A DNA stretch of 64,000 bases, taken from Mytilus californianus (Eukaryota). The stretch's first letter is position 1; every line of letters begins with the position of its first letter. This document shows, piece by piece, positions 3,985-44,505 of the stretch. The notes beneath the pieces were generated by a model. The model saw only the letters and a program-made list of their open reading frames with translations, was not told where the DNA came from and searched no databases. The position numbers and the translations under genes were made by a program. The stretch lies in contig NW_026262695.1 of assembly GCF_021869535.1 (NCBI RefSeq), positions 1,736,001 through 1,800,000 on the forward strand, written 5' to 3'.

Positions 3985-4107
3985 TCACCTTTGTATATTG
4001 GAACCTTCTTGATATATTATTCTTTTCCGTGGTCCACCTTTTTTGTTTCGGCGCTTTGTCTTTTTATTTTCTGCAACGCTACTGTAGCTGTGTTTCCGAC
4101 AATGTGG
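3985..4107 (-). CDS. Exon 14 (terminal): end of ePHD and basic NLS-like tail, PHCRKHSYSSVAENKKTKRRNKKGGPRKRIIYQEGSNIQR*
   Basis: Acceptor atatttctttcag|CCA. PHCRKHS supplies the final C/H ligands (compare JADE SYCPKHS). TGA at 3987-3985. Confidence 0.8.
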   Translation of the reverse strand, partial: PHCRKHSYSSVAENKKTKRRNKKGGPRKRIIYQEGSNIQR

Positions 4108-7100
4108 CTGAAAGAAATATTTTTGGAAGTTTATTCATGACGTGTGTAGACTCGTACGGTTATAATATACGTGTATTTGTTTCATTTCTTAAACTCGGGT
4201 CTCCGCTAATAGATTGCATATAAAAAAGAAGACGGCTATAAGGAGTAAAGAATGCAAATCGAATAGAAAGCGGCAACACTCTCCCCCTCCAAAAAAAAAA
4301 CCAAAAAAAAAAACCAAAAAACAAAAAACAAACAGAAGCTTACGAACACATAACACACAATCAAAGATTCAACAATACGAACCTAATCAATGCTTGGAAG
4401 AAGTCAATTGCTGCGGAATGTTAATATTTCTAAAGATGAATTTTCTTTTTGTTTTCGAAGTCTTGTTAACGAAATCATATTATGAGTATATTTGATACAG
4501 GTTTCTTCCTCAACTAAAATACTAGTATATATAATTGATTTAATGAAAGTAATGTCAGAATTTTCTGAAATAGATGCTTGGTAAACTTCTATAAAATCAG
4601 TATCTTTATGTTATTAAGACCAGTCAGATATAACCCTTCTTGACACTGCTAAGCAATGCACCATTACCACTCCCTGGCCAATTTGAATTCGTATCTGTTC
4701 AGCTTTTTTAAAGACGCCGACATTTGGATTTCCGCACCTGCAAACCAGCGTTTTGACATTTTACTGCAAATTATACCTTAAACACCAATTCTGGTTCTTC
4801 AATCATTTCCATTAGCAAATTGTTTTCAAAACCACATCTACTGTGGAATGCCTTGTAGCAGCCTTTAACGCAACATTGAATGCAAGCGCCCTCCTGTTGT
4901 TTACAAAGACAGCATGTCATCGTCCATCGCTCTTTCTGAAAATTTCATGTAAAGCTGAACACGATTTAACTCGATGAACTACGATACTGTAAAGATATGT
5001 TATGTTATAGGGAATTTATATTGTATACTTCTTAATTTTTTTCCTTTGACAATTCTGAACTTAGAAAAAATTAGTGTTAAATTAGCGATCAATATGAAAA
5101 GAATATTTCAAGTTGGTTACAAGCCTCGAACCAACTCAAAGTATGTCTAAGAACGGACATTCATTATCAGCTCAGTTCGTCTTTAATTTGAAAGTGTTAA
5201 TATGAATTTTCATGTATGTATAAGTTTTACGGAGTTGGTGTGGTGGAATTCAATTTTTTTTATAAAATATTTTCACTTTTGCGTTTGTGTTTGAAAAGTG
5301 TTCTATTAAAAAATTGATTAATTAATTCTAAATAAATGATAGAAATATTATGTTCATATCAATTTCAGGGAAAAACATCTATCTTTAAGCATTTAATTCA
5401 TTGTATATTTAATTTTGCTATTGTTTTAAAATGTGTATTATGATTAAAAGTTTTTTGTCTGATTAAATAAGCATTTTTTGTTGTATTTTTTGTTGTTGTT
5501 TTTTTTAGTAATATCTTTTATTTTAAATCACCTGGAATACACAAACCCTATGCAGTCCAGGGCAGCTGACAGAGGGGTCCCTGCTTTCATTTAACATATC
5601 CCATTTGCCAGGGAAAATACAAATGGGTGAAAAAAAAAAGAAAAAACTCTTATATAATATATATTCAGTAAATCATAGACAGATGCTGTTTTTATATATA
5701 TATTCAGTATATATATATAAAAACAGCATCTGTCTATAATTAGTTACTGTATTCTTCCCTCGATTCTTTACACTTTGAAATCTTGCATTTTCATATAATT
5801 TTATCCGTTTAAGATACAATTATAAAATTATGTATAAGAGTTATTTATATTGTTTTCTTTCTAACAATTTGCACTGTTTAAAGTTCAATCCGAGCTCGTG
5901 TAAATAAGAGACAACCAATTATGAAATCTTTTGTTATTTAAATTGTGTTCCCGGTTAAATGCCTGTTAGATATTGACATAGCCAAAACACGTGCTTCAGT
6001 CACCAGAATTTTCGATGAATGGTTATTTGAGAAATTGTATGTTCACTTATGAACAAACACAGTCTGTGGTGAGTAAATTCTAGTTCAAAAAGGTTTACAA
6101 TTATATAGTATGTAATATAAATATGTATTAAGTATAAACTATAAAATAAACTTATATAAATAATGGCGGTTGTTTGTAAATAAAGGTGTAAACAATATAC
6201 TAGTTCAAAGTGTGCTTTTTGTATTCAAATGATAAATATAGCTATAATACCGGGGCACAGGTTCTTTCATAATTATATATATAATTCTGCATAATGAGCA
6301 AAGAATAAACAAGTGATGTCAAATTCGACCATTTATAGTGAATACAATATTTGAGATAAATGTTCAAGTTTGTCTATTCCGAATAAGTTCTTTTTGTTTG
6401 ATTAAGCGATCATTTTGATAAAATCATTCATATCTTTCTTAAAAATTCGGAAAATGGATGTTTCATTAAAAAATTGTTTTGTTGAATTTAATGTCGTTCC
6501 GACCTTTCCAAATACTAAATTTCCCCTAAAAACACTATCAAATTTCCAATATTTATTTCCGTTTTATCAATATCTTGGTTATATCCAATAATCATGTTTT
6601 GGACCTCAAAGTTAAGTGTTTTATCTATGCACAGAGATAGCAATATTTTTATTTCTTCAATGATTCTTTGAATTTTACAACAATAATAGAATAGATACTC
6701 TTGGGTTTCAAAAAATTTGCCACATAAGTTACATAAGCCATCGGACTTTCGCATTTAATACAATTTAAATTCAGTGTAATGAATATTATGTAATGATTTC
6801 CATTGAAATTGGAATATATTGTTTGATACAGGCAGCTTGTGTAGCTTTTTCCAAACTGATTGCCAGCCTAGTTCCGTATTAAATGTACTGTTCCATTTTA
6901 TTTCACATTTTGCACTTGTACATTTATTAAGTATTTTTTTGTAATGATTTTAATTGCATTTTTTCTGGGGGTATAAAATTACTTTTCATATCAAATATTT
7001 TGTTATTCTGGATTTTTATGTTCTTCAAATTTGTTGCATTACTAATGGCGCTTCTTAGTTCGTTAATCCAATCACTGGGGATTGATTTCTTTTTTTTTTT

Positions 7101-10100: not shown

Positions 10101-13100
10101 GTGTATTAGCTCAGTGATAATGGATGTCATACTAAACTACAAAATATATAAATATGAAATGAAATTAAAAATCATACAAAACTAACAAATGCCAGAGGCC
10201 CCTGACTTGGGACAACCCTCCCCCTATACCTCTAGTCAATGTAGAAAAACAAACACACAGTAATACGCACAGTAAAACTCAGTTAAAAAGAAGTCCGAGT
10301 CCGATGTCAGAATAGGTAACAAAAGAAACTAAACAAAAATACAATGATTCATAATTTAACAAAGGACTACTAGCAGTTACTGACATGCCAGCTCCAGACG
10401 GCCTTTAACACGGAGCATTGACTCACACCAAACAAGCATTGTACAAGTGGTTCATATGACAAAAGCAAGATTAACATTTTATTTATTAATACAGAGGGTT
10501 TTAAAATGCTTTATGATTTTTTTTTAGACTGGAGGAAAATCTGTTATAAATACTGGACTGATGGAGAATTTAAAAACATCTACTAGAGATTTATCCTCTT
10601 GAAATGTTTTCTGACAATTATCAGGACATCTTTACTCCGGCTATTGGGGAATATTTACAATTCAGGACAAATCCAGCCATGAACAAATGGACTGCAGTGT
10701 TTACATCTGGTTTCTGGAGAGAACGAATATGCCAAAACATAAAGAATGATTCTTCTCGGGGAAAGATTTTCGTTATTAAAGACATAATTACAAATTTTAC
10801 ATTTGAACTAAATAGATATCAGCTAAGACCAAAAAGTTAATATATGTCCCATTGTGATTCACAAATTCTTCAATTAAATATATAAAACACATTTTATTTT
10901 TAGCGATTTAGAATGATTTTTTGTTATTCAGGGTAAAACATAGATAAAGTGGTATGAATGTCCATGAAACAGCTATATGGAGGAGAGACAAAATGAAGTA
11001 TGTTGATATTGCAAAAACATATTCAGTCTTAACTGTTTTTTTAGTGAAAAAAAAATTATGTGTAGTTTCATTCTTGAAGGCCCACAATAATTACACAGGA
11101 TTTAAATTATTAAGCACACACATGGAGAATTATGGGAAAATCCTATAAGGCCGTACTTATTAGACGGGCATACATTTGCGCATGGCGAAACAAACTGGAA
11201 AAAAAATTTAAGAAAAGCTCACAGATTTGAGGCCGTATCTTTTTAAACGGACATAGATTTGCGAATGACGTCACGATTGAAAATAGGACACAGATTTGAG
11301 GCCGTATTTTTTTTATGGACATAGATTAGCGATTGACGTCACGATGGGGCACAGATTTGAGAAACTGACACAGATTTCAGGCCGTACACAGATCTGAGGT
11401 TTACATATATACAGACTTTTGACGTTTATATGTTCCCATCAAATTGAAAGGACAAGAAAAACGTTGTCTCATAATCAATTATTTTCTATGATGCCTAACG
11501 GGGGGTCTGATATTTATATTCGACTTATTGTGACGTGATGAGGCATATTATAAATGTTATTGCCGGCTTTGCACTAGCTGAACCTGTAGGATATGATCGT
11601 ATCCGCGAACTGGTATGACGTATCTTTTTACTTTCGGTCACTTAAATGAACAGCAATACGAATATGATTGCTATATGTGTGATGAACATCTTTCCATTAC
11701 GTTGATAAAATACGTACAGGTATCTTATCAAGACTTTCCATTTTCTCCATTCGTTGTGCATCCTCAAACCTAATTTCTGGTATCCACCATACACACTGCA
11801 CATGAGCCCATTCTCTACCGTCACTATAATACAAAAAAAGTGCTTGTTATAGGAAACACTTGAAAATCATTTTTTTTTCAAACAACATCCTTTAACACTT
11901 TCGTCTGTTAGAAACGAATAGGTACATTTTATGATTTTGTCTGCTTTATTTTCTTTAAGGTTTACAACTTTTTGTATTTGACGCAAAACTGCAAACCGTA
12001 AAACTAATTGATTTAAGTTTTTTACCGAAAGAGACATATTGAATAGTTTAGTAAATGTCTTAGAAATTATGCTGGCAACCGCTGGTATACGTGTATCTAT
12101 ATTCAAAATTTTTATCTTGTCTAAAATTTCTTTCTCAGGGATGAAATATTTGTTTAAACGACAAAGAGTTAGATATTAAGCAGACCTCAACTTTTGGTAT
12201 TTGCCTTAATATAATGTTCACGAGGATATATGAGATACATGCACTTGCGGAGATGTATGATATTTGGTGAGTTAGAGGACATCGTCAATACTTTTGTATT
12301 CAAAACTAAAGATTGTGGAAAGATGTTCATTTCTTTTTGTCTCTGGAAATGATTTTTATGATTTCGTGTTCATATGAATATAAAAACCATTCGATCTGTG
12401 GGGATGAACAATAAGTACATATTGGAATTCCGAGTATTTGTCGAAATATCAATTTTCAAATATCAAAGACATACAATCTCAAATATGCCAATGTTTACGT
12501 TTTAATGACACCAAAATGGCATAAAAGAAGAAAGCTTTGCATTTCAGTAGAAAATTGTATATAACCTATTTACCGATAACCATGTGTTTGGTTTAACTTT
12601 GAGAGTTTTCCTCTGCATTCCACAAAGAAAAGCAACATTCAGGATAAATGCTGTATCATATTACGCCAGTCTTATAAGTTTTTAGGCGGGTTGAGGCGAC
12701 AACAATAATAAAATATGATGTGATGTTCCTTTTTTCGGCAGTTTAGTAACATTAATCAATTTTACTGCACCAGATGCACATTTCGACAATTAATATTTCT
12801 TCAGGGGTTATACCAGTACCAAAGTACTAAGTGATATTCGTAGGACAAGGCAGCACAACTCAGATCTATATGGGTTAAAACTGTGTGTTTCACTAGTATT
12901 GTTGTATTGTTGCTAAAACGTAAAATAACAAAAATACCACAAATACTCGGAATTCCAATATGTACTTATTGTTCATCCCCACAGATCGAATGGTTTTTAT
13001 GTTCATATGAACACGAAATCATAAAAATTAAAACGGTAAGTCTTTTATCAAATGGAAAAATCAAAAGCTCAAACACATCAAACGAATGGAAAACAACTGT

Positions 13101-16100: not shown

Positions 16101-17802
16101 TCTAACAAGAAATTTCTTTTGCAGCACACGTAAAAAAAATTGCGGTTTTTATCCAACGCAATCATAGGTTTGAACGTTGTTTTCAATTTAGACTTGTTTA
16201 TATTTTTTCGTTTGGGATTGTATCATATTTGCTTTAGGGTTTATATGATCCGTTCATCCTATTTTGACTCCTCCAAATGCAAGAGTCTATCCTAAATTGA
16301 GGTAAATTGTTGGGCTTTCCAAATACCGTTTCGATTCCTAACATCACTGAAGAGACATTATTTGTCGAACTCCGGATAAGGTGTACAAAAAACTTTGCAC
16401 CTTTTGTTTGCGGTATATCATCTTTTCCGACTTTATTGTTTTTTGTTTAGTATCAAATTTAAAATTAAGATCCATTTATTACATCGGTGATCCGTTTAAT
16501 TGGCAATCGCCAATGGCAGTCAGAAGGGTTTAAGAACATTTGTTGTTCGACCTGTTAGTCAAATGCGTTTTGTTAAAATATACTTTTTCACTTTTTTGGT
16601 CTTTTGGAAAATGTTGTTTGTGCTGTAAATAGACCCCTCTAACAAGAAATTTGTTTTGCAACACACGTAAAAAAATTGCGGTTTTTATCCAACGCAATCA
16701 TAGGTTTAAACGTTGTTTTCAATTTAGACTTGTTTATATTTTTTCGTTTGGGATGGTATCATATTTGCCTTAGGGTTTATATGATCCGTTCATCTTATTT
16801 TGACTCCTCAAAATTCAAGAGTCTATCCTAAATTGAGGTAAATTGTTGGGCTTTCCAAATACCGTTGCGATTCCTAACATCACTGAAGAGACATTATTTG
16901 TCGAAATCCGGATATGGTGAACAAAAATTTTGCACCTTTCGTTTGCAATATATCATCTTTTCCGACTTTATTATTTTCTGTTTAGTATTAAATTTAAAAT
17001 TAAGATCCATTTATTACATCGGTGATCCGTTTATTTGGCTATTGCCAATGGCAGTCAGAAGGGTTTAAGAACATTTGTTGTTCGACCTGTTAGTCAAATG
17101 CGTTTTGTTAAAATATACTTTTTCACTTTTTTGGTCTTTTGGAAAATGTTGTTTGTGCTGTATTTAGACCCCTCTTACAAGAAATTTCTTTTGAAGCACA
17201 CGTAAAAAAATTGCGGTTTTTATCCAACGCAATCATAGGTTTGAACGTTGTTTTCAATTTAGACTTGTTTATATTTTTTCGTTTGGGATTGTATCATATT
17301 TGCCTTAGGGTTGATATGATCCGTTCATCCTATTTTGACTCCTCCAAATGCAAGAGTCTATCCTAAATTGAGGTAAATTGTTGGGCTTTCCAAATACCGT
17401 TTCGATTCCTAACATCACTGAAGAGACATTATTTGTCGAACTCCGGATAAGGTGTACAAAAAACTGTGCACCTTTTGTTTGCGGTATATCATCTTTTCCG
17501 ACTTTATTGTTTTCTGTTTAGTATTAAATTTAAAATTAAGATCCATTTATTACATCGGTGATCCGTTTATTTGGCAATCGCCAATGGCAGTCAGAAGGGT
17601 TTAAGAACATTTGTTGTTCGACCTGTTAGTCAAATGCGTTTTGTTAAAATATACTTTTTCACTTTTTTGGTCTTTTGGAAAATGTTGTTTGTGCTGTAAA
17701 TAGACCCCTCTAACAAGAAATTTCTTTTGCAGCACACGTATAAAAATTGCGGTTTTTATCCAACGCAATCATAGGTTTGAACGTTGTTTTCAATTTAGAC
17801 TT

Positions 17803-17842
<40 letters not shown>

Positions 17843-26800: not shown

Positions 26801-29800
26801 ATTGATCTACTCTTACACCAATTGTACTATTGCATGTCACTTAGTATCTGAGATCTGAACTCAGACCTACAACTTGACATAATTAATGCAGAGTAAAGTT
26901 TAAATCATAGTGACATACTTTTGTTTCATTCTGTCAAGACCTCCAAATAGTAATGATGAAGTAATCTCTTCTAAAGATTTACACATGTTACATACTCTAT
27001 CGTGATTTGGTCGACCGTTATGGAATATCTTTGTCTTTTTTGCTGGTAGCGTTCGTGATTTTAAGTTCCTAGTTTTCCTTGCAATGTTTTGTGGACTATT
27101 GTTTGTCGTTTTATTTGGTCATTGTTTTGATTGTTATTCTTCGACTTATAATTTAATTCATCATTGGTATCTTTTGCCTTTTGTTAGCTATTATTCGTAT
27201 GTTTCTCTGTCCTATATGTTCTCCCATTAATTTGTACTGTAATCCTGTCAAGTAATGTTGTCATTATAATGTTATATTTAACATTGCCATAAAAGCGGGA
27301 GGTTTGGCTAGCCAGAAAACCAGGTTCAACCAACCATTTTTTTTTCTTAAAATGTCCTGTACCAAGTCAGGAAAATTGCCATTGTTATATTATAGTTCGT
27401 TTCTGTGTGTGTTACATTTTAATGTTGTGTTTCTGTTGTGTCGTAGTTCTCCTCTTATATTTGATGTGTTTCCATCAATTTTAGTTTGTTTCCAGGGTTT
27501 GTTTTTTTCTCAATCGATTAATGAATTTCGAACAGCGGTATACTACTGTTGCCTTTATTCAATAACATTGTTTGCAATATCATTGTCAGTTCGTTTTCGA
27601 CATGCGAGTTTGAGTATCACTTTGATATCTTTTGTCTTTCTGTTAGATAAAACAGTAATATAGAAATGATGAGAATGACGCTATAATTCGTTAAACAGGC
27701 ACACATGCCTTAAAATTTTGCTCTTTGTTAATTTAGCAAAAGTATTCCTTGTTTAAGCTATCTCACTTTAATGAATGAAAATAACATTTTTTAAGTTCGT
27801 GCGTCCGGAACGCTTTTTAGGATAAAATCAAGAAATGACATTGAATTGGAAATACATATTAAACCGACGCTAATATGTTTATGTTGTTAACACCTTCATT
27901 CAGAAGTATTCTCTGCTTCACCAACTGCACATACCTTGAGGTAGAAGTATTTCTCCTGTGGACGTCATGTTTTCTTCTGATTTGTTTCTAAATTCACTTT
28001 GATGTTTGGACGACTTAGAGAAAACATTTCTTAAAACGTTTTCCTCCTCTGTGATTAAAAATAAAAATAAAATGTATATAAGATAGTGATCACAGAATTA
28101 TATGCCCGCCTGCAGATGAAGATTACAACTGGGATAAAATTATGAATCATTTGGACAGGAAATGTCTTATGTCTTTTCTCATTTTATAGGGTTAACATGC
28201 GGCATAAATTTATATAACATCTTTTGTGTTTTACGATGGACAGAACGCAAATTATTAGTTCTTCTTCACAGGAAGTACCATAATTCACATGGAACTAAGT
28301 GTTCTTGAAACATGATCTTTGAATTATCATCTGAAGACCACATCATCTATAATGATTTTAACAATCAAGGACAATAATCATTTAAAAACAAAAACTACAA
28401 AATCAAACTGAACCAGAGGTTATTGATTTAATACACTCCCTTAGAGTACACTTCTTAAAATTTACTATCTATTTCAAGAAGCAGTTTGTATTTATCGTCT
28501 GTAAACCATATGTCGAAATTTACATCTGATGCAGTAAAACTGGTACTGTTATTGCTTTGCTTCCTCTGGTAATCTACAGGTAATCAGAGCTATCCATGTA
28601 CATTGACATATGAACTATGGTAATAACGTCAAGATCAAATGAACCCTGCCAAACGGAGATGTACACATGACAATCAATCCATACAAACAATATAAGTGAC
28701 CTATACATGAAAGTGACCTTACCACGTAAGCAGGATATGCTTACCCTTCCGGAGCACCTGAGATTACCCCAGTTTTTGGTTGGGTTCGTGTTGCTCAGTC
28801 TTAAGTTTCTATGTTGTGTTTTGTGTACTATTGTTTGTATGATGGTCTTTTTCTTTTTTAGCCATGGCGTTGTCAGTTTATTTTCGATTTTAAATGTTTG
28901 AATATCCCTTTGGCATTTTTCGCCTCTCTTTTACAAATGAGGTCAAGGACAATCGAAAAAAACAGACAGAAACATAAGAGCATAAGACATCTGTATACAA
29001 GATATAAATATGCAGATATTCAATTTATGAAATAGTTTAAAGTGTTATGCAAAGAGCGCTAACACTGCCACCCTCACTGCCGCCCAAGCTACCGGATTAT
29101 CATCCCTATAATTCAGTTTATGCGATATTATTATCCAGTACCAGTGTATTGGTAACCTGGCTGGTGATACCCTATGACACTTACAGTCCATGAGCCGAGG
29201 TATCGACCCAGTGGTATAAATCATATAAGACAGTACCAAATGAATTGCAACAAATAGCATTTCGACAACAAATGTCTCTTCTTGAACATGTTGAATGCTG
29301 AAGGCCAAATATTTGAAACTCCAAAATAGTCTTCAAACATTATAGAAGTGATTAAACCAATAATAGACCAAACGTTGAGCGTAACCCGGACAAGGAATCA
29401 TAGCTGTGCATAATGCAGATACTTTCCTGAATTTAAAATCATTCCCAGGAATTTCATAACAACAAATTGTAATCAGTCAATATCTTTATTTTAATGTCAT
29501 TACCGAGGTACTGGCAATCGGGCTGGTGATTTATATATGTGTGCATAGTAGATTCCATATCCTTTTTAGTAAAAGAACATATATAATTGTTAAAATCTAC
29601 TGAATTGACATACTATTGGTTAAATAAATAAATATGCGATATCGACAGGACGTCCGAATATAACTAATCTAAATATAGATTACCCGAAGAGTTATGGCAG
29701 TACATTCAATATGGGTGGACAAGACAAAGATTATAAAATATATGAAACTCATACAAAACAGTGTCTGCTTTATGATATTTGTATAAATTTTGTCTGCTTA

Positions 29801-32800
29801 TTATTGAAATGTTTTACTAGATTGTGGCAGTCCTTTATTAATTGAGATGTAATTTTGCTTGATCCCAACCTGATCATGAACGTTTTGAATGTATAACTTT
29901 GAATATCGACTTTTTCAAGAGATTATACTTAAAAATGTGATGAATGATTCAAACAAGCCTTTTGTCATAACATTACTGTTATAAGCAGATTTATTGGAGA
30001 TTTTAGATCAGATTTATCGTTATTCCTATCATAAGCTTTATGAATGATCATGAAAGAGAAGTTTTATGGTCATCATAACGAATTGGTTGACGGATACGAA
30101 GTGTCCAAGTCTCATCATACTAGCGACATATTTTCTGAAAAAAAGACATATTGTTGGATTTGAAAATTAAAACTTCACGTTGAAAAATCAACGTGGGGTT
30201 CCTCTCAATAAATTGAGAACTTTTCATAAAAAGATTTATACCTAGAATTTGACATAAGCAGTCATCTCAGTTTCCTAATCTATGACCAACGAGAAGATTT
30301 TGATTTTGAAATTATAAATTTACCCCACCTTAGCAGCAATATACCAACTTCTGATACGTATGGGATATACATTTCCCTACTCAATCGGTATTAAAGAGCT
30401 TGCAGCTGCTACTCAGACTATATAAAACATCACATGTTTTCTGAGCAGAAAGTTAATGAACCAAGGTAATGTCAAAGAACGTCTCGTCTTTTTTCTAAAA
30501 ATATTCGTCGAAAGAAACCATGACCTTGTTTATAAATATTCCGTATCAACTTCACAAAAAATACATGATGGTCTTGAAGTATAGATTTTAGGAACTGACG
30601 TTGTTTATCATCTTAATTACTTGTTCATGTTGTTATAGTATTCTTTTTATTTGTTTTTGTATATTTTTTACCTTTACTGTTTAGTTCATTATTGGTAATG
30701 TCCTTTTGGCGTGGCTCTATATTTATACATCCCGCCATAGTGTTATTGTGCTATGGTAATTTTTTGTATTCTTATTTTTGTTTATGTGCTTTGTGTATAG
30801 AGTGTCTATATGTCATTTTGTTTTTCTTTGTTGACATAGTTGTTTGTTTTTTAGTGATTAAGATTATAACACAATGTTGACTGCTGTACCCGAATTTTTA
30901 ACATTTCTACCCATCATGTCTGTTTGTGTTGCATGCACATTGTTGTCAATATATGTGTATGCAACTGTCATACAAGTGAGAGGTTTAGCTAGCTATAAAC
31001 GTTTAGTCCACCATTTTCTACACGAGGAAATGCCTGTACCAAGTCAGGAATATGACAGTTGTTTTCCATTCGTTTTAAGTGTTTGAGTTTTTGATTTCGC
31101 CGACTTTCAGTTTTGAATTTTCCTTGGAGTTCGGTATTTTTGTTATTTTACTTGTTAAGAGATTAATATAAAGCCTTATGGAGTAATCAAGGCTGAAATG
31201 GTTAAATAAGATTGACGAAAAATTACAGTTTATTTTGAGACGATGAACTTCTGATAATGTTAAAAGCTTGCTTTTCGTTGTCCATTACCGGCCATCATCC
31301 ATAGGTTTTGTTCAAAATAGATATAAGAGAAGCAGTCGTCATGCGCACATAAGCCGGTATCATTCAATTTTAAATACATCTGTGTCTATACTATCAATGT
31401 CCCAAGTAACCATGCACACGGTAGTCTTTTGTTTGGTTCAAAAATCATCTGATTTTAATGATACATACAGATATAATCGTAATTTTACCATTCAAACCTT
31501 TCCAAACATTTTAAATTTGTCTCGAGTGTATCAAATGAATTTTCTTTAAAATATAAGTATTCTGGATCCTAAAATTGGTGTCATACGTTTTGGTTTTTGT
31601 TTTTAAATTACATGCCCATTACAGTCTTCTGATCACTTTCACTGTCACGTGGTGTGATAAAAAATGGATGTAATGAAAGTGACCAATTTGTAAATTTATA
31701 GTATATAAAAATAGCTTTGAAAATGAGCCACAATAGTGTTCGTTACATGACTCACCTGTTGTCAAAGGACTTTTAACATTAAATCTAATATAGATTTCTG
31801 CCTGCTCAGAAGTGTCCACTTGTCCTGTTATCAAAATTCTCTCAACCAATGTTTGCATTCTGGAATTAAGTATATGTTCACTTTTGAAAGTGTCTGGCAG
31901 TGTTCTTATTTCCAGTAATATGCACCCTTATTTAACGTTGTCAATTTTCCATCCGTCATTTCTTTCAAACGATTTATCCTTTTCTAGACCATTTCTCATC
32001 TTATCTTCATCTAAGTCATGTTGTTTTATTTTTACCTCTATTTCCTTGTTATATTCTACAGTAAAAAAAAAAAACACGCAGGTTGACATTGTATTTTTAC
32101 TTGTACCAAGTCAGGAATGTGAGAGTTGATGTAGCCGAGCTTTTGGTTTTGTCAGTTTTCATGGACTACCCATTTTTAAATTTATCTTAGAGTTTAGTAT
32201 TTTTGATATTACATTTTCAATAAGCTTATCGAAATAAATTAATTTTGCTTATTAAGGAAAACGACAGCAATGTCATATTTTCTGTGTGGCTAAAAAAAGA
32301 TTTGTTCAGACATTCAGCATTGATGTATCATTTTAAAAGAAACTAACTGAGTAACATTATGTATTCAATACACTTGTTGCTGTTTCTGAATTTTCATTTG
32401 TTAATGCTATGATTTACATGCCATCTATTCATCTGGAATTTGTAGCCCTATTACTTATTCCCACGTGTTTATTAAAAAGAAAATAGATGGAGAGTACGTG
32501 TGAAACGAAGACTTGGAGGTGTTATGGCCGCTGAAAAGGCCACACTTCGAATTATATTTCAGATATTTAAGATGAAATTGAAGTCGAAGAAGCAACAAAG
32601 CGTGACGAAAAACTAACAGATGTCATACAAGCAAATAGGGAGACGGTTCTTTGGGGACAAAAATTGGTGGAACAGAGAGTGCTGCTACCAAAAGACAAAC
32701 AGAATACGGAGTTATCATATTTAAGCATATAGTCCATATATTTCTTTTCTCTAACAATCACCTTCCCTTACAGTGTCTCTTAGATATAAAACATATGCAT

Positions 32801-35800
32801 TTTCATACACATGTGCATAGGTAAAAAACCATTACCATATATTTTAGGCCAGGCAAGAAAAATGTTCCTGAAACCAGGCCTCAGAAGTCATATAAATTTG
32901 ACCTTTTTTTAATGAAAGACTGATTAGCGGGTTTGCATACAACATGTACAAATACTGATAAAAAAATACCTATCTTGAAAAGTACATTCAAAAATGTTAT
33001 GTAACAAACATGAAAAAATTTGACATGTGAGCATTTGCCACTTTATTTGAGAATTCAAATTAAACAAGATTGTTGTTGTGTATCTGTTGTTGATGATAAT
33101 GTTCCCGACAGAGAAATTGTTGGGCAGGCCCTATAAGCAATCAGCCATTTATGGTCTGCAAATTATCAAAAATTATCACAAGGACCATAAGAGCTACGTT
33201 TCCGCAGTTATGTATCAGTAAAAAGTCGGAATGTTAAAATTTGAACGGGTTGATCCAAACAACACTTTACTAAACTAACTTAATAATAGTCTTAAAGTTA
33301 TACAATGTCCAATAAATACCTTCTGATAGAAGTGAGCCAGATGTTGATGAACTTGTACCAGGTGATATTGACGCTGAAAAAATGGCTTTGACATTCTTCA
33401 CTTCTTTTGTCAGTTCTCCCAAAATGTTACACACTTGATCTGTATTAAATGATACATGGCGTTTTAAATGTATTTTGTTAAAATAAAACTGTGCAGGTAG
33501 CGCTGTAAACGGTAAACTACGAATTTATTCTAATGAGATTGTTTTTAAGTTAAAGTTCTTTAATCTTTATTTTTCGACAGGATGTAACAATACTAAAATC
33601 GTTAAAAAAATTCAAATGAGAAACAAAAATTACACACAAAAAACAAATAATACACACATTTCGCTCATGTTTGTTATATGCATACACTTCAAATGATTTA
33701 ATCTTGAACATATATAAGGTTTCCAATTATTTGTTGTTGTTGTTCAATTGAGTTTGTTGTTGTTTCTATCTCTTTTTGTTTGTTTGTTTTTTCTTTCTTT
33801 TTTATCCTGTAAAAGGATACATTTTAATCAACTCACTAAATGCTGACTAAGTTGAATATTATAAGTTAGATGAATAGATAAAAGAATTATTTACCATCTC
33901 AAACAACAAACGTTAATATTACTAAATAAATCATGAATTTAAAACATTGGTATAGAAATTCGGGACAAGCACCGACTCAAACTTTCTGTTAACCGTTTCA
34001 TTTTTATGAATACAGTGCTATTTTCATTTATCTTCATTAATATCTTCTTTAGAACATAATTTTGTTTAGATTTTTAAATATGGCACAGACTTTTGGTGAA
34101 GATCACATAGCTTTCTTTTAATTTCTTTTGCCATGCTTTGAATTGCTTTTATGTTGAATGAATAAACCAACATGTCTTTTATGCAATATAAAATAGCATG
34201 AAAACCATAGTCTTGACCAGTTCATTAACTTCACATCACTTAGTCTTTAAAACAAATGACCTAACGCAATCTCATTTGCTATGAATGTGTAATTACGAAA
34301 TCAATGTGTACTGTTATTGAATATATTACAAAACGCGAAATACTAATAAGTCAAACTATGTTTCAAAGTGATTGCTTATTTAAGTAATTGGACAAATTTA
34401 ATGATGATATAAACATTCCTAACTTTATTTTGCCTCAGTTGTTAACAGGACATGCTTTTTAAGCTTTTTAAATTCAAATGCAGTCCTGTATTCATGATAA
34501 TAAAGTTAGGCCAAAAATTGATAACGTTACAATAAACTCACCTTGCGTAAGAGTACAATAATAAGTAAAAAATCTTTAGTCATGGGAGAACATGATTTAT
34601 GTACTAATTGTTATCAGATTTGATCTAGCTTTCAGTAACTGCGAGTACTCTTGTATCTTTAATCTGTATGGCAGTTGTTTTTGAGCTTTGTGTCAAAATT
34701 ATGAGTCAAGCCATTTTCAACTGATTTTTATGGTTAGATTTATGCGGTGCTGTTTCACCAATGGCCAAGGAGAGGGTTGAGAACTAAGAAACATGTTTAA
34801 TCCCATGTCAGAAGCCTGTAATTTAGTAGAAGTCGTTGGTTGCTTAGTCATATTTGCTTTTTGATTATCGTTTTGTCATAAATCAGGCTTTTAGTTTTTA
34901 ATGTTGAGTTGTGAACGTTTCGGAAATTCAGAGCCTTTCTACTTACTATACAATGAGTTTTGATCATTTGTACCGTATGGTGACATTTACTTGCTTTAGT
35001 CATTAAGAATCTGGTAAATTTGTTGTCTCTTTTAAAATCATACCACATTTCCTAATTTTATTTTTTAGTAAGAATCTATTTTTGATTATATACGAACTAT
35101 CTTCAAATACCTTTAAATTCTTTATTTTGTTCTTCCTGGCGATTTTGTGAATCTCTTATTTCCCCCAATATAGTTGTCAGTCCCTCCGTCTGTTTCGTTT
35201 GTTCTCTAATATGGTCTATGCACATTTTGGTATCCTATAAAATAGAAGAGAATGGAAGACCTGCACGAAAATGTATAATATGAACAATCATTCTAGATTC
35301 TTTTTTAAATTTTATAAATAACTATATATTTTTGATATATTTTCACACTGAAGATGCCAAAGAAAAAATAGAATTATTTTGTTCATATATTATTGACAGG
35401 TGACACTCCTTCAGAGGTACCTGACCAAGCGGTCTAAGCAGTTTGATTTCAGTGAGTCATGGACTTTCAACACCGGGGTTGTGAGTTCGAAATTCGAAGG
35501 TGTTTTTAACTTCGATCTGAACTGAAAAGAATTGTCATTTTTACCGCGGAAGGGTGTTTGTTCTCTCCGGTTACAAAAGCATTTCTCTATCAACAAAAGT
35601 TGGCTGCCATGGTATAGAAAAAGTTTCTAAAAGATGCGTTAAACATCAACAAACGAACACACATTCTTTCAGAAATCGTACAATAAACAAGGTAAGATGG
35701 GCGGGATAGATATTGAGGATGATCTACAATTGTATCTTATGTTAGATAAACATGACCAAATAATTAGCCATACCGTTAAAACCTGGTCAACGTTCGAAAG

Positions 35801-36442
35801 TAATCCCTGAATTTCTTTGTCATTCAAAACGGTTTGCCTTGTAGTTTTGATTAGCCTCTTTATATATTTTGCATGATCTGGAGACAATAGACATAATGCA
35901 TCAGAAAATTCGGTCCACATGGAATTAAGGTCAGTTTCTAAAAATATCTTGCTATTTACTGCGTGACATACTTTATTTCTTATATTTTTTAACAAGTCTA
36001 GTTGTTCTTCTTCAGATGATGTTAATAACGTTGACAATGGAGAATTCCGACATAAGAAATTTAGGTCGGTTAAATCTAAGTCTGCGATAGAAATGCTCTT
36101 TTCTGTGTAATCACATATGCACTTAATAATTGATGTACCATTCCTCCTTGTGTGTCCAAAGGAACAACCCCCTGATTTGCCATACGCATACAGTTTTTCG
36201 AATATTGCTCTATTCAAATATCCTGTTGGTCGAATTGAACATCCTACTTTTGGACATTCACAACACAACTGATTTTTCTTTGCTAATTGATGATACATAT
36301 GGTGCTTAATCTTTTTTAGAAAATCATTACAAAAATTAGTTTGATAATTTTTCTGTATCTTTTCATTTGCTAAGTCTCGTACAACCTCTGCACCCAAGTC
36401 TATAATGCACTGGAAAAATAGAAGAAAGTCTCTTTGGTTCAT
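3985..36442 (-). CDS. 14-exon gene: DZIP3-like HEPN + TRADD-N-like + CxxC-CxxC + JADE-type PZP (PHD/Zn-knuckle/ePHD) protein; ~756 codons with one in-frame TAA in exon 4
   Basis: Exons in transcript order: 36442-35774, 35234-35111, 33439-33320, 32055-31756, 28048-27935, 26401-26198, 23001-22960, 22682-22632, 19864-19788, 19221-19159, 13829-13711, 11823-11718, 4935-4777, 4107-3985. All 13 introns are GT-AG and phases chain (0,1,1,1,1,1,1,1,0,0,2,0,0). Total 2271 nt. The PZP sequence reads continuously across 6 exons. Confidence 0.8.
4777..4935 (-). CDS. Exon 13: ePHD (PHD2), KERWTMTCCLCKQQEGACIQCCVKGCYKAFHSRCGFENNLLMEMIEEPELVFK
   Basis: ttttcag|AAA ... AAG|gtataa, 159 nt, phase 0-0. Matches JADE/BRPF RWxLxCxLC...GAxIQC...C..AFHxxC. 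Confidence 0.88.
5675..5737. repeat. Perfect inverted repeat (hairpin), 26-bp arms
   Basis: atagacagatgctgtttttatatata ... tatatataaaaacagcatctgtctat are exact reverse complements around a short spacer. Confidence 0.9.
6330..6960 (-). mobile_element. Tx1/L1-clade LINE 3' remnant (zf-RVT region)
   Basis: Minus-strand translation IFQFQWKSLHNIHYTEFKLY*MRKSDGLCNLCGKFFETQEYLFYYC..., followed by ..SIWKGRNDIKFNK. This is the CxxC..ET..HL...C and IWKxRN signature of L1/Tx1 ORF2 C-termini. Stops and frameshifts are present. Confidence 0.75.
7317..7510 (+). repeat. Left subterminal ~23-bp tandem array of the Ginger-like element
   Basis: The tctcaaatctatg core recurs at 7398, 7421, 7444, 7467 and 7490 (period 23), with degenerate copies leftward to the TIR. 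Confidence 0.85.
7568..10840 (+). pseudogene. Multi-exon KRBA2/SCAND3-type integrase-like transposase pseudogene
   Basis: Exon A 7568-8548 has HH (KKHMKDH) and CC (CPCC) zinc ligands, RWQxDL, NIVDCYSR, LQSDNGKEF and RPYHPHSQGRV*RFN, with frameshifts and stops (TGA 8234, TAA 8381 at the catalytic Glu). Exons B 8990-9161, C 9407-9558 and D 9818-9922 splice in frame via GT-AG. Exon E (from 10528) is degenerate. Confidence 0.8.
10010..10420 (+). repeat. Dispersed bivalve-type repeat(s) inserted in the last intron of the transposase
   Basis: gcacccggaggcgt..ttagctggcccctaaacaaa..tcagtgataatgga.gtcatactaaact is shared with the copy at 14695-14890. Confidence 0.65.
11170..11400 (-). repeat. Right subterminal repeats of the Ginger-like element (inverted CAAATCTRTG motifs)
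   Basis: Repeated cacagatttg/catagatttg motifs, the reverse complement of the left-array core, irregularly spaced up to the right TIR. Confidence 0.8.
11718..11823 (-). CDS. Exon 12: Zn-knuckle end, (S)DGREWAHVQCVWWIPEIRFEDAQRMEKMESLDKIP
   Basis: ttttttgtattatag|T ... CCT|gtacgt, 106 nt, phase 2-0. Matches JADE WVHVSCALWIPEV...MEPI..V..IP. Confidence 0.88.
12995..13270 (+). repeat. Dispersed repeat family A (SINE/Helitron-like non-autonomous element)
   Basis: aaaatcaaaagctcaaacacatcaaac.aatggaaaacaactgtcatattcct... is also present at ~37790-38180 (+) and inverted at ~30730-31160. Confidence 0.7.
13711..13829 (-). CDS. Exon 11: PHD1 end and Zn-knuckle start, GCYYIPDIPDEDWICRPCSEGVQPKCILCNQNKGAMAKT
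   Basis: ctttcttcttaag|GGA ... ACA AG|gtatta, 119 nt, phase 0-2. CSEGVQPKCILC closely matches JADE CALGVQPKCLLC. Confidence 0.9.
14425..14555. repeat. Long imperfect palindrome (~55-bp arms, loop gagccgaaggcga)
   Basis: attcaggtctcagacagggtacataatgtgacattcccggcttagagtttatat pairs with atataaaccctaagccgggaatgtcacattatataccctgtttgaaacctgaat. Confidence 0.85.
15213..17806 (+). repeat. Tandem array of ~536-bp units (about 4.8 copies)
   Basis: The anchor gtctatcctaaattgaggtaaattgttgggc recurs at 15213, 15748, 16285, 16821 and 17356 (periods 535-537). The units look near-identical by eye. Confidence 0.95.
17806..17837. repeat. (TA)n microsatellite terminating the tandem array
   Basis: About 16 TA units directly fused to the truncated last array unit. 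Confidence 0.9.
19159..19221 (-). CDS. Exon 10: PHD1 middle, KEKEDNNELVYCGMCEVLVHQ
   Basis: gattttag|AAA ... CAC CAG|gtaagt, 63 nt, phase 0-0. Compare JADE DGNEMVFCDKCNICVHQ. Confidence 0.88.
19788..19864 (-). CDS. Exon 9: acidic lead-in and PHD1 start, (E)FTADHQEQTEDIESITDDPCDVCGG
   Basis: cacttacatttag|AA ... GGC|gtaagt, 77 nt, phase 1-0. Contains the CDVC motif. Confidence 0.85.
21290..21680 (+). repeat. Dispersed repeat family B
   Basis: tttcaactgatttttatag...ttaatccc...agtcaggagcctgtaattcagtggttgtc...ggcaatcataccaca. Related copies at ~20550-20850 and ~34700-35060, and inverted at ~58700-59020. Confidence 0.7.
22632..22682 (-). CDS. Exon 8: (E)PPPIYVKTEEEDLLIK
   Basis: tatttatttctag|AA ... 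AAA G|gtagtt, 51 nt, phase 1-1, open frame. Confidence 0.65.
22960..23001 (-). CDS. Exon 7: (G)VLQGLISTKNEFQ
   Basis: ctattttttatag|GT ... CAA G|gtaaaa, 42 nt, phase 1-1, open frame. Confidence 0.65.
25129..25194. repeat. Fold-back hairpin (28-bp arms, 10-nt loop) at the head of a repeat family C copy
   Basis: atcatagaattaaccattaaggcaacag / ctgttgctttaatggttaattctgtgat, 26/28 complementary. Family C (aaggcaacagtagtataccgctgtt) also occurs at ~22070 and, inverted, at ~27555 and ~63500. Confidence 0.85.
26198..26401 (-). CDS. Exon 6: CxxC-x5-CxxC module, (D)IEDAREIRGAIKTKGNLQILQKDSEEIVECPKCHNKFKCGQCNSKLLIMQNLMSKRGSYNLQIRHVM
   Basis: tatttatatag|AT ... ATG G|gtgagt, 204 nt, phase 1-1, fully open. 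Confidence 0.75.
27935..28048 (-). CDS. Exon 5: (E)EENVLRNVFSKSSKHQSEFRNKSEENMTSTGEILLPQ
   Basis: ttttaatcacag|AG ... CAA G|gtatgt, 114 nt, phase 1-1, open frame. Confidence 0.75.
30242..30584 (+). mobile_element. Penelope-like retroelement RT C-terminal remnant
   Basis: LEFDISSHLSFLIYDQREDFDFEIINLPHLSSNIPTSDTYGIYISLLNRY*RACSCYSDY...LSRKLMNQG: the same family signature as 1981-2290, with a stop and a frameshift. Confidence 0.75.
31756..32055 (-). CDS. Exon 4: TRADD-N-like module with in-frame TAA at 31930-31928
   Basis: ttttactgtag|AA ... ACA G|gtgagt, 300 nt, phase 1-1. Reads YNKEIEVKIKQHDLDEDKMRNGLEKDKSFERNDGWKIDNVK*GCILLEIRTLPDTFKSEHILNSRMQTLVERILITGQVDTSEQAEIYIRFNVKSPLTT. The fold call is an inference from the I.xV.xGCILL motif. 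Confidence 0.75.
33320..33439 (-). CDS. Exon 3: (D)QVCNILGELTKEVKNVKAIFSASISPGTSSSTSGSLLSE
   Basis: catttaatacag|AT ... GAA G|gtattt, 120 nt, phase 1-1. A helix followed by a Ser-rich linker. Confidence 0.78.
35111..35234 (-). CDS. Exon 2: coiled-coil-like, DTKMCIDHIREQTKQTEGLTTILGEIRDSQNRQEEQNKEFK
   Basis: ctcttctattttatag|GAT ... AAA G|gtattt, 124 nt, phase 0-1. Bridges exon 1 (phase 0) to exon 3 (phase 1). Confidence 0.78.
35416..35658 (+). mobile_element. tRNA-derived SINE (degenerate), antisense in intron 1
   Basis: A-box-like tgaccaagcggtctaag at 35422 and B-box-like gagttcgaaat at ~35483, followed by a mollusc-SINE-like tail (..gctgccatggtatag...gcgttaaacatcaac). No complete cloverleaf. 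Confidence 0.55.
35774..36442 (-). CDS. Exon 1 (first coding): DZIP3-like HEPN domain, 223 aa
   Basis: ORF-track protein up to VLT, then donor ACG|gtatgg; acceptor tttgtttcttgcag| at 36446. Shows the LDLTDLNFL...LKNIRNKVCHA...LNSMW..FSDAL pattern with the Rx4H motif at 35980-35963, plus an HxxYH...CCEC...C...CIC cluster. Confidence 0.85.
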
Positions 36443-43914: not shown

Positions 43915-43954
43915 TTAACTTGGAATTTTGACTTCTTGTGACAGCACAATTTTT

Positions 43955-44505
43955 TTAAACAAATGGCTTGTCACTTAAATTAGTGAAATTATCTACATCA
44001 GTTTTAAAATCTACCCAATCAGCATCCATAGATTTGCAATTTTTACATTCAGGATTTCTAACTCCCTGTTTAATATGATCACAGAGTGATATGTCATATT
44101 CACGTCGTGAAAGCGAGTCAGCATTTTGATGTTTAACCCCTGGTCTGTGTTGAATATCAAAATTATACTGTGAGAGGGTCTCGAGCCAACGAGCCAACTG
44201 CCCCTGTTGGTCTTCAAAATTAAACAACCATCTCAAGGATGCATGGTCGGACCTTAGCAAAATTTTCGACCAACTAAGTAATGGCGAAACTGATGTATAA
44301 ATGTAATGACTGCTAAAAGCTCACGTCTGGTCACACTATATCGTTGTTGTGGTTTATCTAATTTTGTGGACCCATAGGCAATCACCTTTTCCTTCCTATT
44401 TTGAATTTGAGAAAGTACTGACCCAATTCCAATATTAGATGCGTCAGTATCTAAAATAAACTGACCTTCTGGTAATGGATATGCCAAAATTGGAGCTACA
44501 CACAA
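43955..44505 (-). pseudogene. Gypsy RNase H (frameshifted)
   Basis: APILAYP...FILDTDASNIGIGSVLSQ...VIAYGS...YSVTRRELLAV / LRSDHASLRWL...GQLARWLETL...IQHRPGVKHQNADSLSR. Confidence 0.92.

What the first reader, a model, noticed from the sequence alone, without database searches (positions are those of the whole stretch)
3985..36442. Hidden 14-exon gene fusing a DZIP3-like HEPN domain to a complete JADE-type PZP histone reader
Seen: 14 exons with canonical GT-AG sites whose phases chain into one ~756-codon frame. Only exon 1 appears in the ORF track as a recognisable protein. Established: HEPN domains with an Rx4H motif are mostly RNases acting in defence, toxin or RNA-processing roles. PZP modules of JADE/BRPF/AF10 bind nucleosomes (histone H3 tail and DNA) and normally sit behind an EPC-N region in histone acetyltransferase scaffolds. 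Inference: this architecture would put a candidate ribonuclease on chromatin, for example for co-transcriptional silencing of transposon or viral RNA, or as a nuclear immune effector. I know of no described HEPN-PZP fusion, but I cannot search.
Basis: partly seen in the sequence, partly recalled or inferred. Interest (0 to 1): 0.92.

Follow-up and report, generated by a model that had tools for sequence, protein, structure and literature searches.

The report
Mussel HEPN–JADE-reader–ankyrin fusion gene, broken copy
This mussel locus belongs to a small Mytilus gene family that joins a predicted RNA-cutting HEPN domain to a JADE-type histone-H3 reader, a nuclear import signal and ankyrin repeats in one protein, but this particular copy carries a stop codon in its fourth exon and gave no RNA reads.

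Summary
The exons are real. On the minus strand I rebuilt 13 coding exons (36442 to 2795), all GT-AG and all phase-compatible. They are collinear over 738 codons with a 741-aa protein encoded without interruption on a 2,530-nt transcript-like contig from a relative.

The architecture is also real:
- Exon 1 folds as a DZIP3-type HEPN domain with R155x4H160.
- The C-terminal module is a complete JADE-type PZP, with the same intron positions as the genome's own JADE gene.

1. The frame is not open. Codon 347 in exon 4 is TAA, where relatives have CAA, CAT or CGT.
2. The gene does not end at 3985. It continues through a PKKRKV exon and five ankyrin-repeat exons, four of them beyond the window's left edge.
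3. It is not wholly hidden. RefSeq annotates the PZP-ankyrin half of this locus, and M. edulis models already merge HEPN, PHD and ankyrin parts.

An intact 735-codon paralog lies on another contig of this genome. One RNA-seq run gave zero reads on exons 4-6.

Verdict: this is a real Mytilus family with a domain combination I found in no paper. This copy is a nonsense allele or young pseudogene. RNase activity and chromatin binding are inferred, not shown. Two first-reader notes on this window cover the stop codon and the HEPN exon.

The parts
35774..36442 (-). Exon 1, codons 1-223: DZIP3-like HEPN domain with R155x4H160 and a conserved Cys/His cluster (KHH 46-48, CCxCP 60-64, C108). An acceptor AG lies 4 nt before the ATG, so a 5'UTR exon probably lies upstream.
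35111..35234 (-). Exon 2 (124 nt, phase 0 to 1): charged helical linker, probably coiled coil
33320..33439 (-). Exon 3 (120 nt, phase 1 to 1): linker ending in a Ser/Thr-rich stretch
31756..32055 (-). Exon 4 (300 nt, phase 1 to 1): core of a ferredoxin-like (beta-alpha-beta-beta-alpha-beta) middle domain shared with HEPN-only relatives
31928..31930 (-). In-frame TAA, codon 347, between strands 2 and 3 of the middle domain. Relatives have CAA (M. edulis, M. coruscus), CAT (own paralog, M. coruscus) or CGT (cDNA).
27935..28048 (-). Exon 5 (114 nt, phase 1 to 1). Its donor G|GTATGT read through gives the 'QGMCSW*' end of the split M. coruscus models.
26198..26401 (-). Exon 6 (204 nt, phase 1 to 1): CPKC(473-476)...CGQC(482-485), a possible small zinc ribbon. 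It links the two halves.
22632..22682 (-). Optional 51-nt cassette exon (phase 1 to 1, EPPPIYVKTEEEDLLIK). It is used in M. edulis model CAG2246465.1 and absent from the cDNA relative.
19788..19855 (-). Exon 7 (68 nt): start of PHD1 (PCDVC). The RefSeq model instead starts at an ATG at 19910, inside intron 6, and reads into this exon.
19159..19221 (-). Exon 8 (63 nt): middle of PHD1
13711..13829 (-). Exon 9 (119 nt): end of PHD1 and start of the zinc knuckle
11718..11823 (-). Exon 10 (106 nt): zinc knuckle and start of the extended PHD
4777..4935 (-). Exon 11 (159 nt): extended PHD (zf-HC5HC2H, E 2.6e-13)
3989..4107 (-). Exon 12 (119 nt): end of the PZP (PHCRKHS) and basic stretch KKTKRRNKK.
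2795..2846 (-). Exon 13: SESQPKKRKVR, a PKKRKV nuclear-localisation-like motif. Read through, it ends at TAG (2797-2795). In the RefSeq model a donor after KKRKVR (about 2814) splices on to the ankyrin exons.
1649..1711 (-). Exon 14 (approximate bounds): DKKTQEITLEEIQSKNDQGD, the lead-in to the ankyrin repeats. Four more ankyrin exons lie 430 to 8,522 bases left of the window start (C115:1727479-1735571).

Best explanation
The window comes from Mytilus californianus. Its PZP and ankyrin exons match RefSeq XP_052059273.1 at 100% over most exons.

The locus belongs to a Mytilus multigene family. From N- to C-terminus the full-length product has:
- a DZIP3-type HEPN domain;
- a helical linker;
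- a ferredoxin-like middle domain;
- a CxxC...CxxC motif;
- a JADE-type PZP histone reader;
- a PKKRKV nuclear signal;
- in some forms, ankyrin repeats.

The family arose by exon shuffling. The PZP-coding exons of a JADE gene were copied as DNA, introns included, downstream of a HEPN gene.

In this assembly the copy has a C-to-T change that turns CAA into TAA at codon 347. This allele therefore cannot make the fusion protein. It could make a 346-residue HEPN fragment from a message that should be prone to nonsense-mediated decay. It could also make the PZP-signal-ankyrin protein from an internal start, as RefSeq models it. An intact paralog on contig C35 encodes the full fusion.

Inferred mechanism of the intact protein:
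- the nuclear signal imports it;
- the PZP holds it on the unmodified N-terminal tail of histone H3;
- two HEPN domains pair through helix 1 and the Rx4H helix into a composite RNase site that would cut RNA near chromatin;
- the ankyrin repeats bind a partner.

Shown here: the exons, the domains, the stop codon, the paralog and the spliced relative. Inferred: nuclear location, H3 binding, dimerisation and any RNase activity.
For: Collinearity: P0003 (741 aa) aligns exon by exon to the window. It sits uninterrupted on a 2,530-nt Logan contig, whereas the genomic copies carry kb-scale introns at the same points.

Other loci with the same layout:
- A second locus in the same genome (C35:32.625-32.652 Mb) has all 13 exons with matching phases, nine of the same length, and an intact 735-codon frame.
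- The M. edulis locus L019 has all 13 exons in order.
- In M. coruscus a HEPN model is followed 5.3 kb downstream, on the same strand, by an exon-6+PZP+ankyrin model.

Stop codon: the window has TAA where relatives have CAA, CAT or CGT.

Constraint:
- dN/dS against the paralog and the cDNA is 0.25-0.36 in the PZP and about 0.47 overall.
- Against M. edulis it is 0.43 in the HEPN half and 0.38-0.43 in the PZP half.
Both halves were therefore under selection until recently.

HEPN.

Dimer: ipSAE 0.59 against a best control of 0.00. The mark was reached by 21 of 30 solved homodimers and 0 of 23 monomers. The runs share at least 76% of contacts and partner pLDDT is at least 78. The interface is residues 3-18, 120-125 and 159-165, which includes H160.

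PZP. JADE PZPs bind the H3 tail, and JADE1 also binds DNA (PMC13483916). Intron positions are shared with the canonical JADE gene on C165.

Ankyrin exons and the RefSeq match.
Against: - No RNA read fell on exons 4, 5 or 6 in the one RNA-seq run available. Only about 6% of that run was read. Splicing of this copy is therefore unproven.
- RefSeq starts its model inside intron 6, and the M. coruscus annotation splits the two halves.
- The Pfam HEPN score for this sequence is below the curated cutoff.
- PDB fold matches to HEPN proteins are weak (Z about 7, in the range common for helical bundles).
- The dimer pass comes from a model that may be recalling known HEPN dimers.
- I do not know the organism, or whether the run was RNA or DNA, for the contig that carries P0003. 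A processed retrocopy would equally derive from a spliced mRNA.
- The M. edulis copy has frame-breaking length differences in several exons, so this lineage of the family may be decaying. Assembly errors are not excluded.
Confidence: 0.72

Rival explanations
1. The TAA is not fixed. It is a segregating null allele of the sequenced animal, or a base error. In other individuals this locus makes the full HEPN-PZP-ankyrin protein.
For: There is a single lesion in 738 codons. It is a one-step C-to-T change from the CAA seen in M. edulis and M. coruscus. dN/dS is well below 1 on both sides of the stop. Bivalve immune-type HEPN genes are reported to vary strongly between haplotypes (PMC9646362).
Against: No read data cover the codon, because the RNA run had zero depth there. 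I could lay no DNA run. The related M. edulis locus also shows damage.
Confidence: 0.3
2. There are two separate genes. A HEPN-only gene ends at or before exon 5, and an independent PZP-ankyrin gene starts near 19.9 kb. The apparent fusion is a by-product of neighbourhood and occasional read-through transcripts.
For: RefSeq XP_052059273.1 starts at an ATG at 19910 in intron 6. The M. coruscus annotation splits at exon 5/6. No RNA reads were seen on exons 4-6.
Against: The transcript-like contig joins exons 1-13 in one open frame. All linker exons keep phase 1 to 1 in two paralogs and keep an intact 735-codon frame on C35. Exons 5-6 are conserved with dN/dS 0.5-0.7. The M. coruscus P0001 model stops where its contig ends. 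The 'QGMCSW*' end of the split models is read-through of a GTATGT donor. Two M. edulis models merge the parts.
Confidence: 0.15
3. Exon 4 is skipped, or the TAA is read through, so this allele still yields a functional fusion protein that lacks or keeps the middle domain.
For: Exon 4 is symmetric (300 nt, phase 1 to 1), so skipping it keeps the frame.
Against: Exon 4 encodes four of the six core elements of a middle domain conserved even in HEPN-only relatives. The cDNA relative includes it. Nothing here indicates programmed read-through, and no junction reads are available.
Confidence: 0.05
4. The whole locus is an old dead pseudogene.
For: There is a stop codon, no RNA reads on three exons, and damage in the M. 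edulis relative.
Against: Only one lesion lies in 2.2 kb of coding sequence. All 24 splice sites are intact. All PZP zinc ligands are kept. dN/dS is 0.25-0.47. The RefSeq model has an open 495-codon frame over the 3' half.
Confidence: 0.08

Closest known systems
DZIP3/hRUL138-like HEPN domain proteins of bivalves and cnidarians (Pfam PF18738)
   Same: An N-terminal all-helical domain with Rx4H and Asn after the Arg. It is used as a head domain that is shuffled onto many C-terminal modules. Lineage-specific expansions occur in molluscs (PMC3710099; PMC9646362). Structure search puts exon 1 next to these clusters.
   Different: [quoted passage not shown] No PHD or PZP partner is listed. Here there is no NTPase switch. 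The sequence is too divergent to reach Pfam's cutoff.
JADE1/2/3, scaffold subunits of the HBO1 histone acetyltransferase complex
   Same: The PHD1-zinc knuckle-extended PHD module is closest to JADE (E 1e-50). It shares the JADE gene's intron positions. JADE PZPs bind the H3 tail. An M. edulis family member is even named 'JADE3'.
   Different: No EPC-N/EPL1 region was found in any family member. That region is present in true JADE and BRPF proteins (PF10513 in P0066). The protein therefore should not scaffold HBO1. The true JADE gene is elsewhere, at C165:32.53 Mb.
RNase L (ankyrin repeats plus a KEN/HEPN-type RNase domain)
   Same: It combines ankyrin repeats with a HEPN-superfamily nuclease that acts as a dimer. 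Weak hits appear to both parts: Ribonuc_2-5A at E 0.049 on the Rx4H stretch, and RNase L ankyrin at E 2e-10.
   Different: The domain order is reversed, there is no pseudokinase and there is no chromatin reader. The ankyrin hits are generic. This is an analogy, not homology of architecture.
Swt1 and Las1, nuclear HEPN endoribonucleases of eukaryotes
   Same: They are a precedent for HEPN RNases working in the nucleus (from my own knowledge and PMC3710099). The Swt1 HEPN domain is among the top structural rows (Z 6.2).
   Different: They have no histone-reader domain. They are conserved housekeeping factors, not a lineage-specific family.

Membership tests
HEPN superfamily, DZIP3-like branch (PF18738) | Profile match at Pfam's curated cutoff | tested here: inconclusive
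   The window's exon 1 scores 20.3-21 bits, E 3e-4 to 5e-4, against a cutoff of 27. Of 40 aligned relatives, 12 hit PF18738 at E<0.01 (best 6.6e-7). Single relatives hit HEPN_Apea and HEPN_RiboL-PSP.
HEPN superfamily, DZIP3-like branch (PF18738) | All-alpha HEPN fold | tested here: met
   AlphaFold model has pLDDT 90.8. The top ESM Atlas cluster gives TM 0.77, 200 residues aligned, rmsd 2.7, with 78% of members carrying PF18738. Further rows are NACHT or COR-Roc proteins with PF18738. In the PDB: Csm6 Z 7.2, AbiF 7.1, Swt1 6.2. These are weak for a helical bundle.
HEPN superfamily, DZIP3-like branch (PF18738) | Rx4-6H motif, usually with Asn after the Arg | tested here: met
   R155-N-K-V-C-H160 is present. 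The motif is conserved in most of the 40 relatives.
HEPN superfamily, DZIP3-like branch (PF18738) | Dimer that brings two Rx4H motifs together | tested here: met
   Prediction only. ipSAE is 0.59 against a best control of 0.00. The mark was reached by 21 of 30 solved homodimers and 0 of 23 monomers. The interface includes residues 159-165 of both copies. The pass may reflect memory of known HEPN dimers.
HEPN superfamily, DZIP3-like branch (PF18738) | Metal-independent RNase activity | not testable with these tools
   Needs an enzyme assay.
PZP module (PHD-zinc knuckle-PHD) of JADE type | PHD1 C4HC3, zinc knuckle C2HC and extended PHD ligands all present | tested here: met
   All Cys/His are present in the spliced window protein. 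Pfam zf-HC5HC2H scores E 2.6e-13 on exon 11 and zf-HC5HC2H_2 scores 1.3e-6 on exon 10. RefSeq protein XP_052059273.1, from the same exons, scores PHD 2.4e-7 and zf-HC5HC2H_2 9.6e-29.
PZP module (PHD-zinc knuckle-PHD) of JADE type | Closer to JADE than to BRPF, AF10 or PHF14 PZPs | tested here: met
   Tested on the relative P0003: JADE3/JADE1 E 7e-51 to 1e-50, NTO1/BRPF1 1e-36 to 1e-34, AF10 2.5e-22, PHF14 4e-20. The window's PZP is 65% identical to P0003's.
PZP module (PHD-zinc knuckle-PHD) of JADE type | Gene structure shared with JADE | tested here: met
   The four intron positions between exons 7-11 coincide with those of the canonical JADE gene at C165:32.53 Mb.
PZP module (PHD-zinc knuckle-PHD) of JADE type | Binding of the histone H3 tail and DNA | not testable with these tools
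   Known for human JADE PZPs (PMC13483916). Untested here.
JADE protein family (HBO1 scaffold) | EPC-N/EPL1 region (PF10513) ahead of the PZP | tested here: not met
   No PF10513 hit in P0003, P0065 or P0072. It is present in the true JADE protein P0066. This is not a JADE orthologue, despite the M. edulis name.
Ankyrin-repeat proteins | Tandem ANK repeats | tested here: met
   In XP_052059273.1, Ank scores E 9.4e-20 and Ank_2 2.3e-19. The exons map at 1711-1649 and left of the window.

The most novel reading that the evidence does not exclude
Mytilus mussels carry a small family of nuclear HEPN ribonucleases that are tethered to nucleosomes by a JADE-derived H3-tail reader. They cut chromatin-associated RNA, for example nascent transposon or viral transcripts. 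This would be a kind of co-transcriptional defence effector not described in animals. The ankyrin repeats would act as a regulatory or partner-binding module.
Probability: 0.2. Interest if true: 0.85.

Novelty: new variant of a known kind. Interest (0 to 1): 0.55.

Why it matters
DZIP3-type HEPN domains are among the most expanded putative immune effector heads in bivalves, and none has been tested at the bench.

A version attached to a histone-H3 reader and a nuclear signal would place a candidate RNase on chromatin. Its target site would then be predictable, and three things become directly testable: H3 peptide binding, localisation, and RNase activity with Rx4H mutants.

The locus is also a clean case of exon shuffling, because the JADE PZP exons were copied with their introns.

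For annotation, three Mytilus genome annotations treat the same gene layout in three different ways: split, merged and half. The name 'JADE3' given to an M. edulis member is misleading.

For this copy the practical message is that the intact C35 paralog, not this locus, is the one to study.

Tried and rejected
- **RNA reads.** I laid run X1 on 26150-32100 (5,951 letters, within the operators' limit). Depth was zero on exons 4-6 and no joints were seen. All reads sat on intronic repeats at 95-99% likeness. This is no evidence for or against splicing. It used my only reads call, so exons 1-3, exons 7-13 and the C35 paralog were not tested.
- **Run search.** No run is on record as RNA that holds exon 1.
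- **PDB sequence search with exon 1.** Only chance-level hits.
- **Foldseek against PDB.** Nothing at E<=0.001, although the top weak rows were AbiF and Csm6.
- **Middle domain.** A generic ferredoxin-like fold with best Z 5.5. No family assigned.
- **Pfam on the linker and on HEPN-only relatives.** No families.
- **The look-up of encoding contigs for the RefSeq protein P0065.** Not on record.
- **Last protein search, with exon 1.** No M. californianus protein of 122-388 aa. I found no public model for the HEPN half of this locus, though that search sees only this length range.
- **Bacterial-type promoter scan near 19.9 kb.** Not meaningful for a eukaryote; disregarded.
- **Tandem Repeats Finder.** Nothing.
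- **Rejected idea: conserved short isoform.** The 'QGMCSW*' end of M. coruscus P0001 looked like a conserved short form. It is read-through of a GTATGT donor, and that gene sits at the end of its contig.
- **Rejected idea: shared stop in the paralog.** The 'stop inside' flagged for the C35 exon-4 match is not the window's stop. The paralog has CAT at that codon.

Full report
**What is in the sequence**

The window has no N, is AT-rich (about 31% GC) and is plainly eukaryotic. The only long ORF in the finding's range is 35669-36442 on the minus strand (257 aa). Its coding part ends at a GT donor after 35774.

A search of 1.84 billion protein representatives with exon 1 found 62 relatives. One of them, P0003 (741 aa), carries PHD and zf-HC5HC2H domains at residues 533-694, behind the exon-1-like N-terminus.

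tblastn of P0003 against the window gave a fully collinear series of minus-strand matches from 36442 down to 2813. From these and the flanking sequence I fixed 13 exons:
- 36442-35774
- 35234-35111
- 33439-33320
- 32055-31756
- 28048-27935
- 26401-26198
- 19855-19788
- 19221-19159
- 13829-13711
- 11823-11718
- 4935-4777
- 4107-3989
- 2846-2795

Every intron is GT-AG with a pyrimidine-rich acceptor. The phases chain into 738 codons.

First, codon 347 is TAA (31930-31928), in the middle of exon 4. A first-reader note on this window flagged the same stop (s1-318238).

Second, the TGA at 3985 is not the end. A donor at 3989|GT leads to a conserved exon encoding SESQPKKRKVR. The same exon is present in the paralog (SESQKKKRKF...) and in the cDNA relative (SEPQKKKRKVR...).

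Third, the gene runs on. RefSeq protein XP_052059273.1 (LOC127699935, Mytilus californianus, 495 aa) matches the window's exons 7-13 at 100% over most exons. It then matches an exon at 1711-1649 and four exons 430 to 8,522 bases left of the window, which encode ankyrin repeats. This also identifies the genome as M. californianus.

The full layout would be about 18 coding exons and roughly 985 codons. A 51-nt cassette at 22682-22632 keeps the frame and is used in an M. edulis model.

**Is it one gene?**

Evidence for one gene:
- P0003 lies as one uninterrupted ORF (110-2335) on a 2,530-nt Logan contig. The three genomic loci I examined have kb-scale introns at the same places, so that contig derives from a spliced mRNA joining exons 1-13. 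Its 3' end is a different short terminal exon with AATAAA signals, which is a form without ankyrin repeats.
- The same genome has a second complete locus on contig C35 (32.625-32.652 Mb). It has all 13 exons with matching phases, nine of the same length, and an intact 735-codon frame.
- The M. edulis locus L019 has all 13 exons in order. Two M. edulis models (CAG2246465.1 'JADE3' and CAG2188356.1) merge HEPN, PHD and ankyrin parts.
- In M. coruscus a 446-aa HEPN model is followed 5.3 kb later, on the same strand, by a model that starts in exon 6 and continues through PZP and ankyrin repeats.
- The other M. coruscus HEPN model (P0001) stops 409 bp before its contig ends. Its 'QGMCSW*' tail is read-through of the exon-5 donor G|GTATGT.

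Evidence against, or missing:
- The only RNA-seq run of this species that I could lay (X1, about 6% read) gave zero depth on exons 4, 5 and 6, and no joints. All reads sat on intronic repeats.
- RefSeq begins its model at an ATG at 19910, inside intron 6.
- I found no public protein of 122-388 aa for the HEPN half of this locus.

**State of this copy**

The stop is a single C-to-T step from the CAA seen in M. edulis and one M. coruscus copy. Other copies have CAT or CGT. No other lesion was found.

Against the paralog and the cDNA, dN/dS is about 0.47 overall and 0.25-0.36 in the PZP. Against M. edulis it is 0.43 for exons 1-4 and 0.38-0.43 for exons 7-13. Both halves were therefore under moderate purifying selection until recently. 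The stop is young, segregating, or (less likely for a substitution) an error.

The M. edulis locus has two 1-bp insertions in exon 1. It also has length differences that are not multiples of three in exons 2, 3, 5 and 10. I did not inspect those individually, and assembly errors are not excluded.

**The domains**

*HEPN.* Pfam PF18738 scores below its cutoff for this sequence, but 12 of 40 relatives hit it. The second-best hit is the KEN/RNase L family, on the Rx4H stretch. The AlphaFold model is confident (pLDDT 90.8). Its best ESM Atlas neighbours are mollusc and cnidarian clusters that carry PF18738, with TM up to 0.77. In the PDB the top rows are Csm6, AbiF and Swt1, at weak Z.

R155-N-K-V-C-H160 is present. 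A homodimer prediction passed its controls: ipSAE 0.59 against 0.00. The mark was reached by 21 of 30 solved homodimers and 0 of 23 monomers. Runs agree in at least 76% of contacts and pLDDT is at least 78. The interface is formed by helix 1, residues 120-125, and 159-165 including H160. This is the usual HEPN arrangement, but the pass may come from memory of solved dimers.

A conserved His/Cys cluster (K46, H47, H51, C60, C61, C63, C108) looks like a metal site. I did not test it.

*Middle region.* Exons 4-5 fold as a beta-alpha-beta-beta-alpha-beta unit (pLDDT about 80) with no specific relative. The stop falls between strands 2 and 3. Exon 6 carries CPKC...CGQC.

*PZP.* All zinc ligands are present. 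The relative's PZP is far closer to JADE1/JADE3 than to BRPF1, AF10 or PHF14. The four intron positions inside the module equal those of the genome's canonical JADE gene on C165. The module was therefore copied as genomic DNA, not by retroposition. No EPC-N/EPL1 region is present, so the protein is not a JADE scaffold.

*Tail.* The basic stretch KKTKRRNKK and the PKKRKV motif resemble classical nuclear signals, judged from my own knowledge. The ankyrin repeats are generic, with a full-length weak match to I-kappa-B zeta.

**How it most likely works**

Shown here: the architecture, its conservation and the broken state of this copy.

From established knowledge:
- JADE PZPs bind the free N-terminus and residues 20-28 of H3, and JADE1 also binds DNA (PMC13483916).
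- HEPN domains with Rx4-6H are mostly dimeric RNases (PMC3710099).
- DZIP3-type HEPN heads are expanded in bivalves and proposed to degrade viral or transposon RNA (PMC9646362).

Inference: the intact family members are nuclear, sit on H3 tails, and bring a dimeric HEPN site next to chromatin-associated RNA. This allele cannot do that. At most it yields a truncated HEPN fragment and/or the PZP-ankyrin protein.

**Novelty**

Full-text searches found no paper that combines HEPN with PZP, JADE or PHD in this sense. [quoted passage not shown]

Predicted proteins with the combination are already public, but uncharacterised and in one case misnamed. I rate it a new variant of a known kind.

Other notes of this scan report HEPN fused to a beta-propeller and to STAND-ankyrin in the same genome. 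This fits a picture of free shuffling of the HEPN head. I did not test those notes.

Noticed in passing
window 43250-47620, minus strand: An LTR-retrotransposon-like element. It has a gag plus aspartyl protease ORF (46022-47620), a reverse transcriptase ORF (44652-45122, RVT_1 E 1e-31), then RNase H/integrase-like frames (43958-44535) and a coiled-coil ORF (43249-43914).
   Followed up: partly
window 15200-17800, minus-strand frames (intron 8): Several near-identical repeated units about 0.5-1.1 kb apart. They show up as recurring peptide strings in the stop-to-stop listing. Tandem Repeats Finder reported nothing (longest period 500).
   Followed up: no
window 27150-27750, 28700-28900, 30700-31320 (introns 4 and 5): RNA-seq reads pile up here at 95-99% likeness, with many fixed differences and loose ends. 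They probably come from expressed repeat copies elsewhere in the genome, not from this locus.
   Followed up: no
G000 C35:32625001-32652000, minus strand (L015-L018): An intact paralog of the whole HEPN-PZP gene (735 codons, His at the stop position) with ankyrin exons downstream. It is 79-81% identical to M. coruscus P0001 over the HEPN half.
   Followed up: yes
L019:9702-10372 (M. edulis CAJPWZ010002868.1): Exon 1 of the M. edulis counterpart has two 1-bp insertions, one in an A-run. This explains why the 'JADE3' model starts at an internal Met. It could be real decay or an assembly error.
   Followed up: partly
L020 (M. coruscus CACVKT020003474.1:570603-639390): Model P0064 contains the PHD1-zinc knuckle exons twice in tandem (residues 88-182 and 184-279) before the ankyrin repeats. 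This is either an internal exon duplication or an assembly or annotation artefact.
   Followed up: no
G000 C1:114907170-114907625, minus strand (L006): A PZP-like stretch (39% identity to P0003 residues 529-678) in one 295-aa open frame without introns. It could be a retrocopy or a different PZP gene.
   Followed up: no
window 36443-36470, minus strand: A strong acceptor (tttgtttcttgcag) lies 4 nt upstream of the ATG of exon 1, so at least one non-coding 5' exon should lie further upstream. It was not located.
   Followed up: no
exon 1 protein residues 46-63 and 108: A nearly invariant KH..YH...CC.C...C pattern runs across the 40 relatives, in loops of the HEPN model. It may be a zinc site that is not part of the classical HEPN core.
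   Followed up: no
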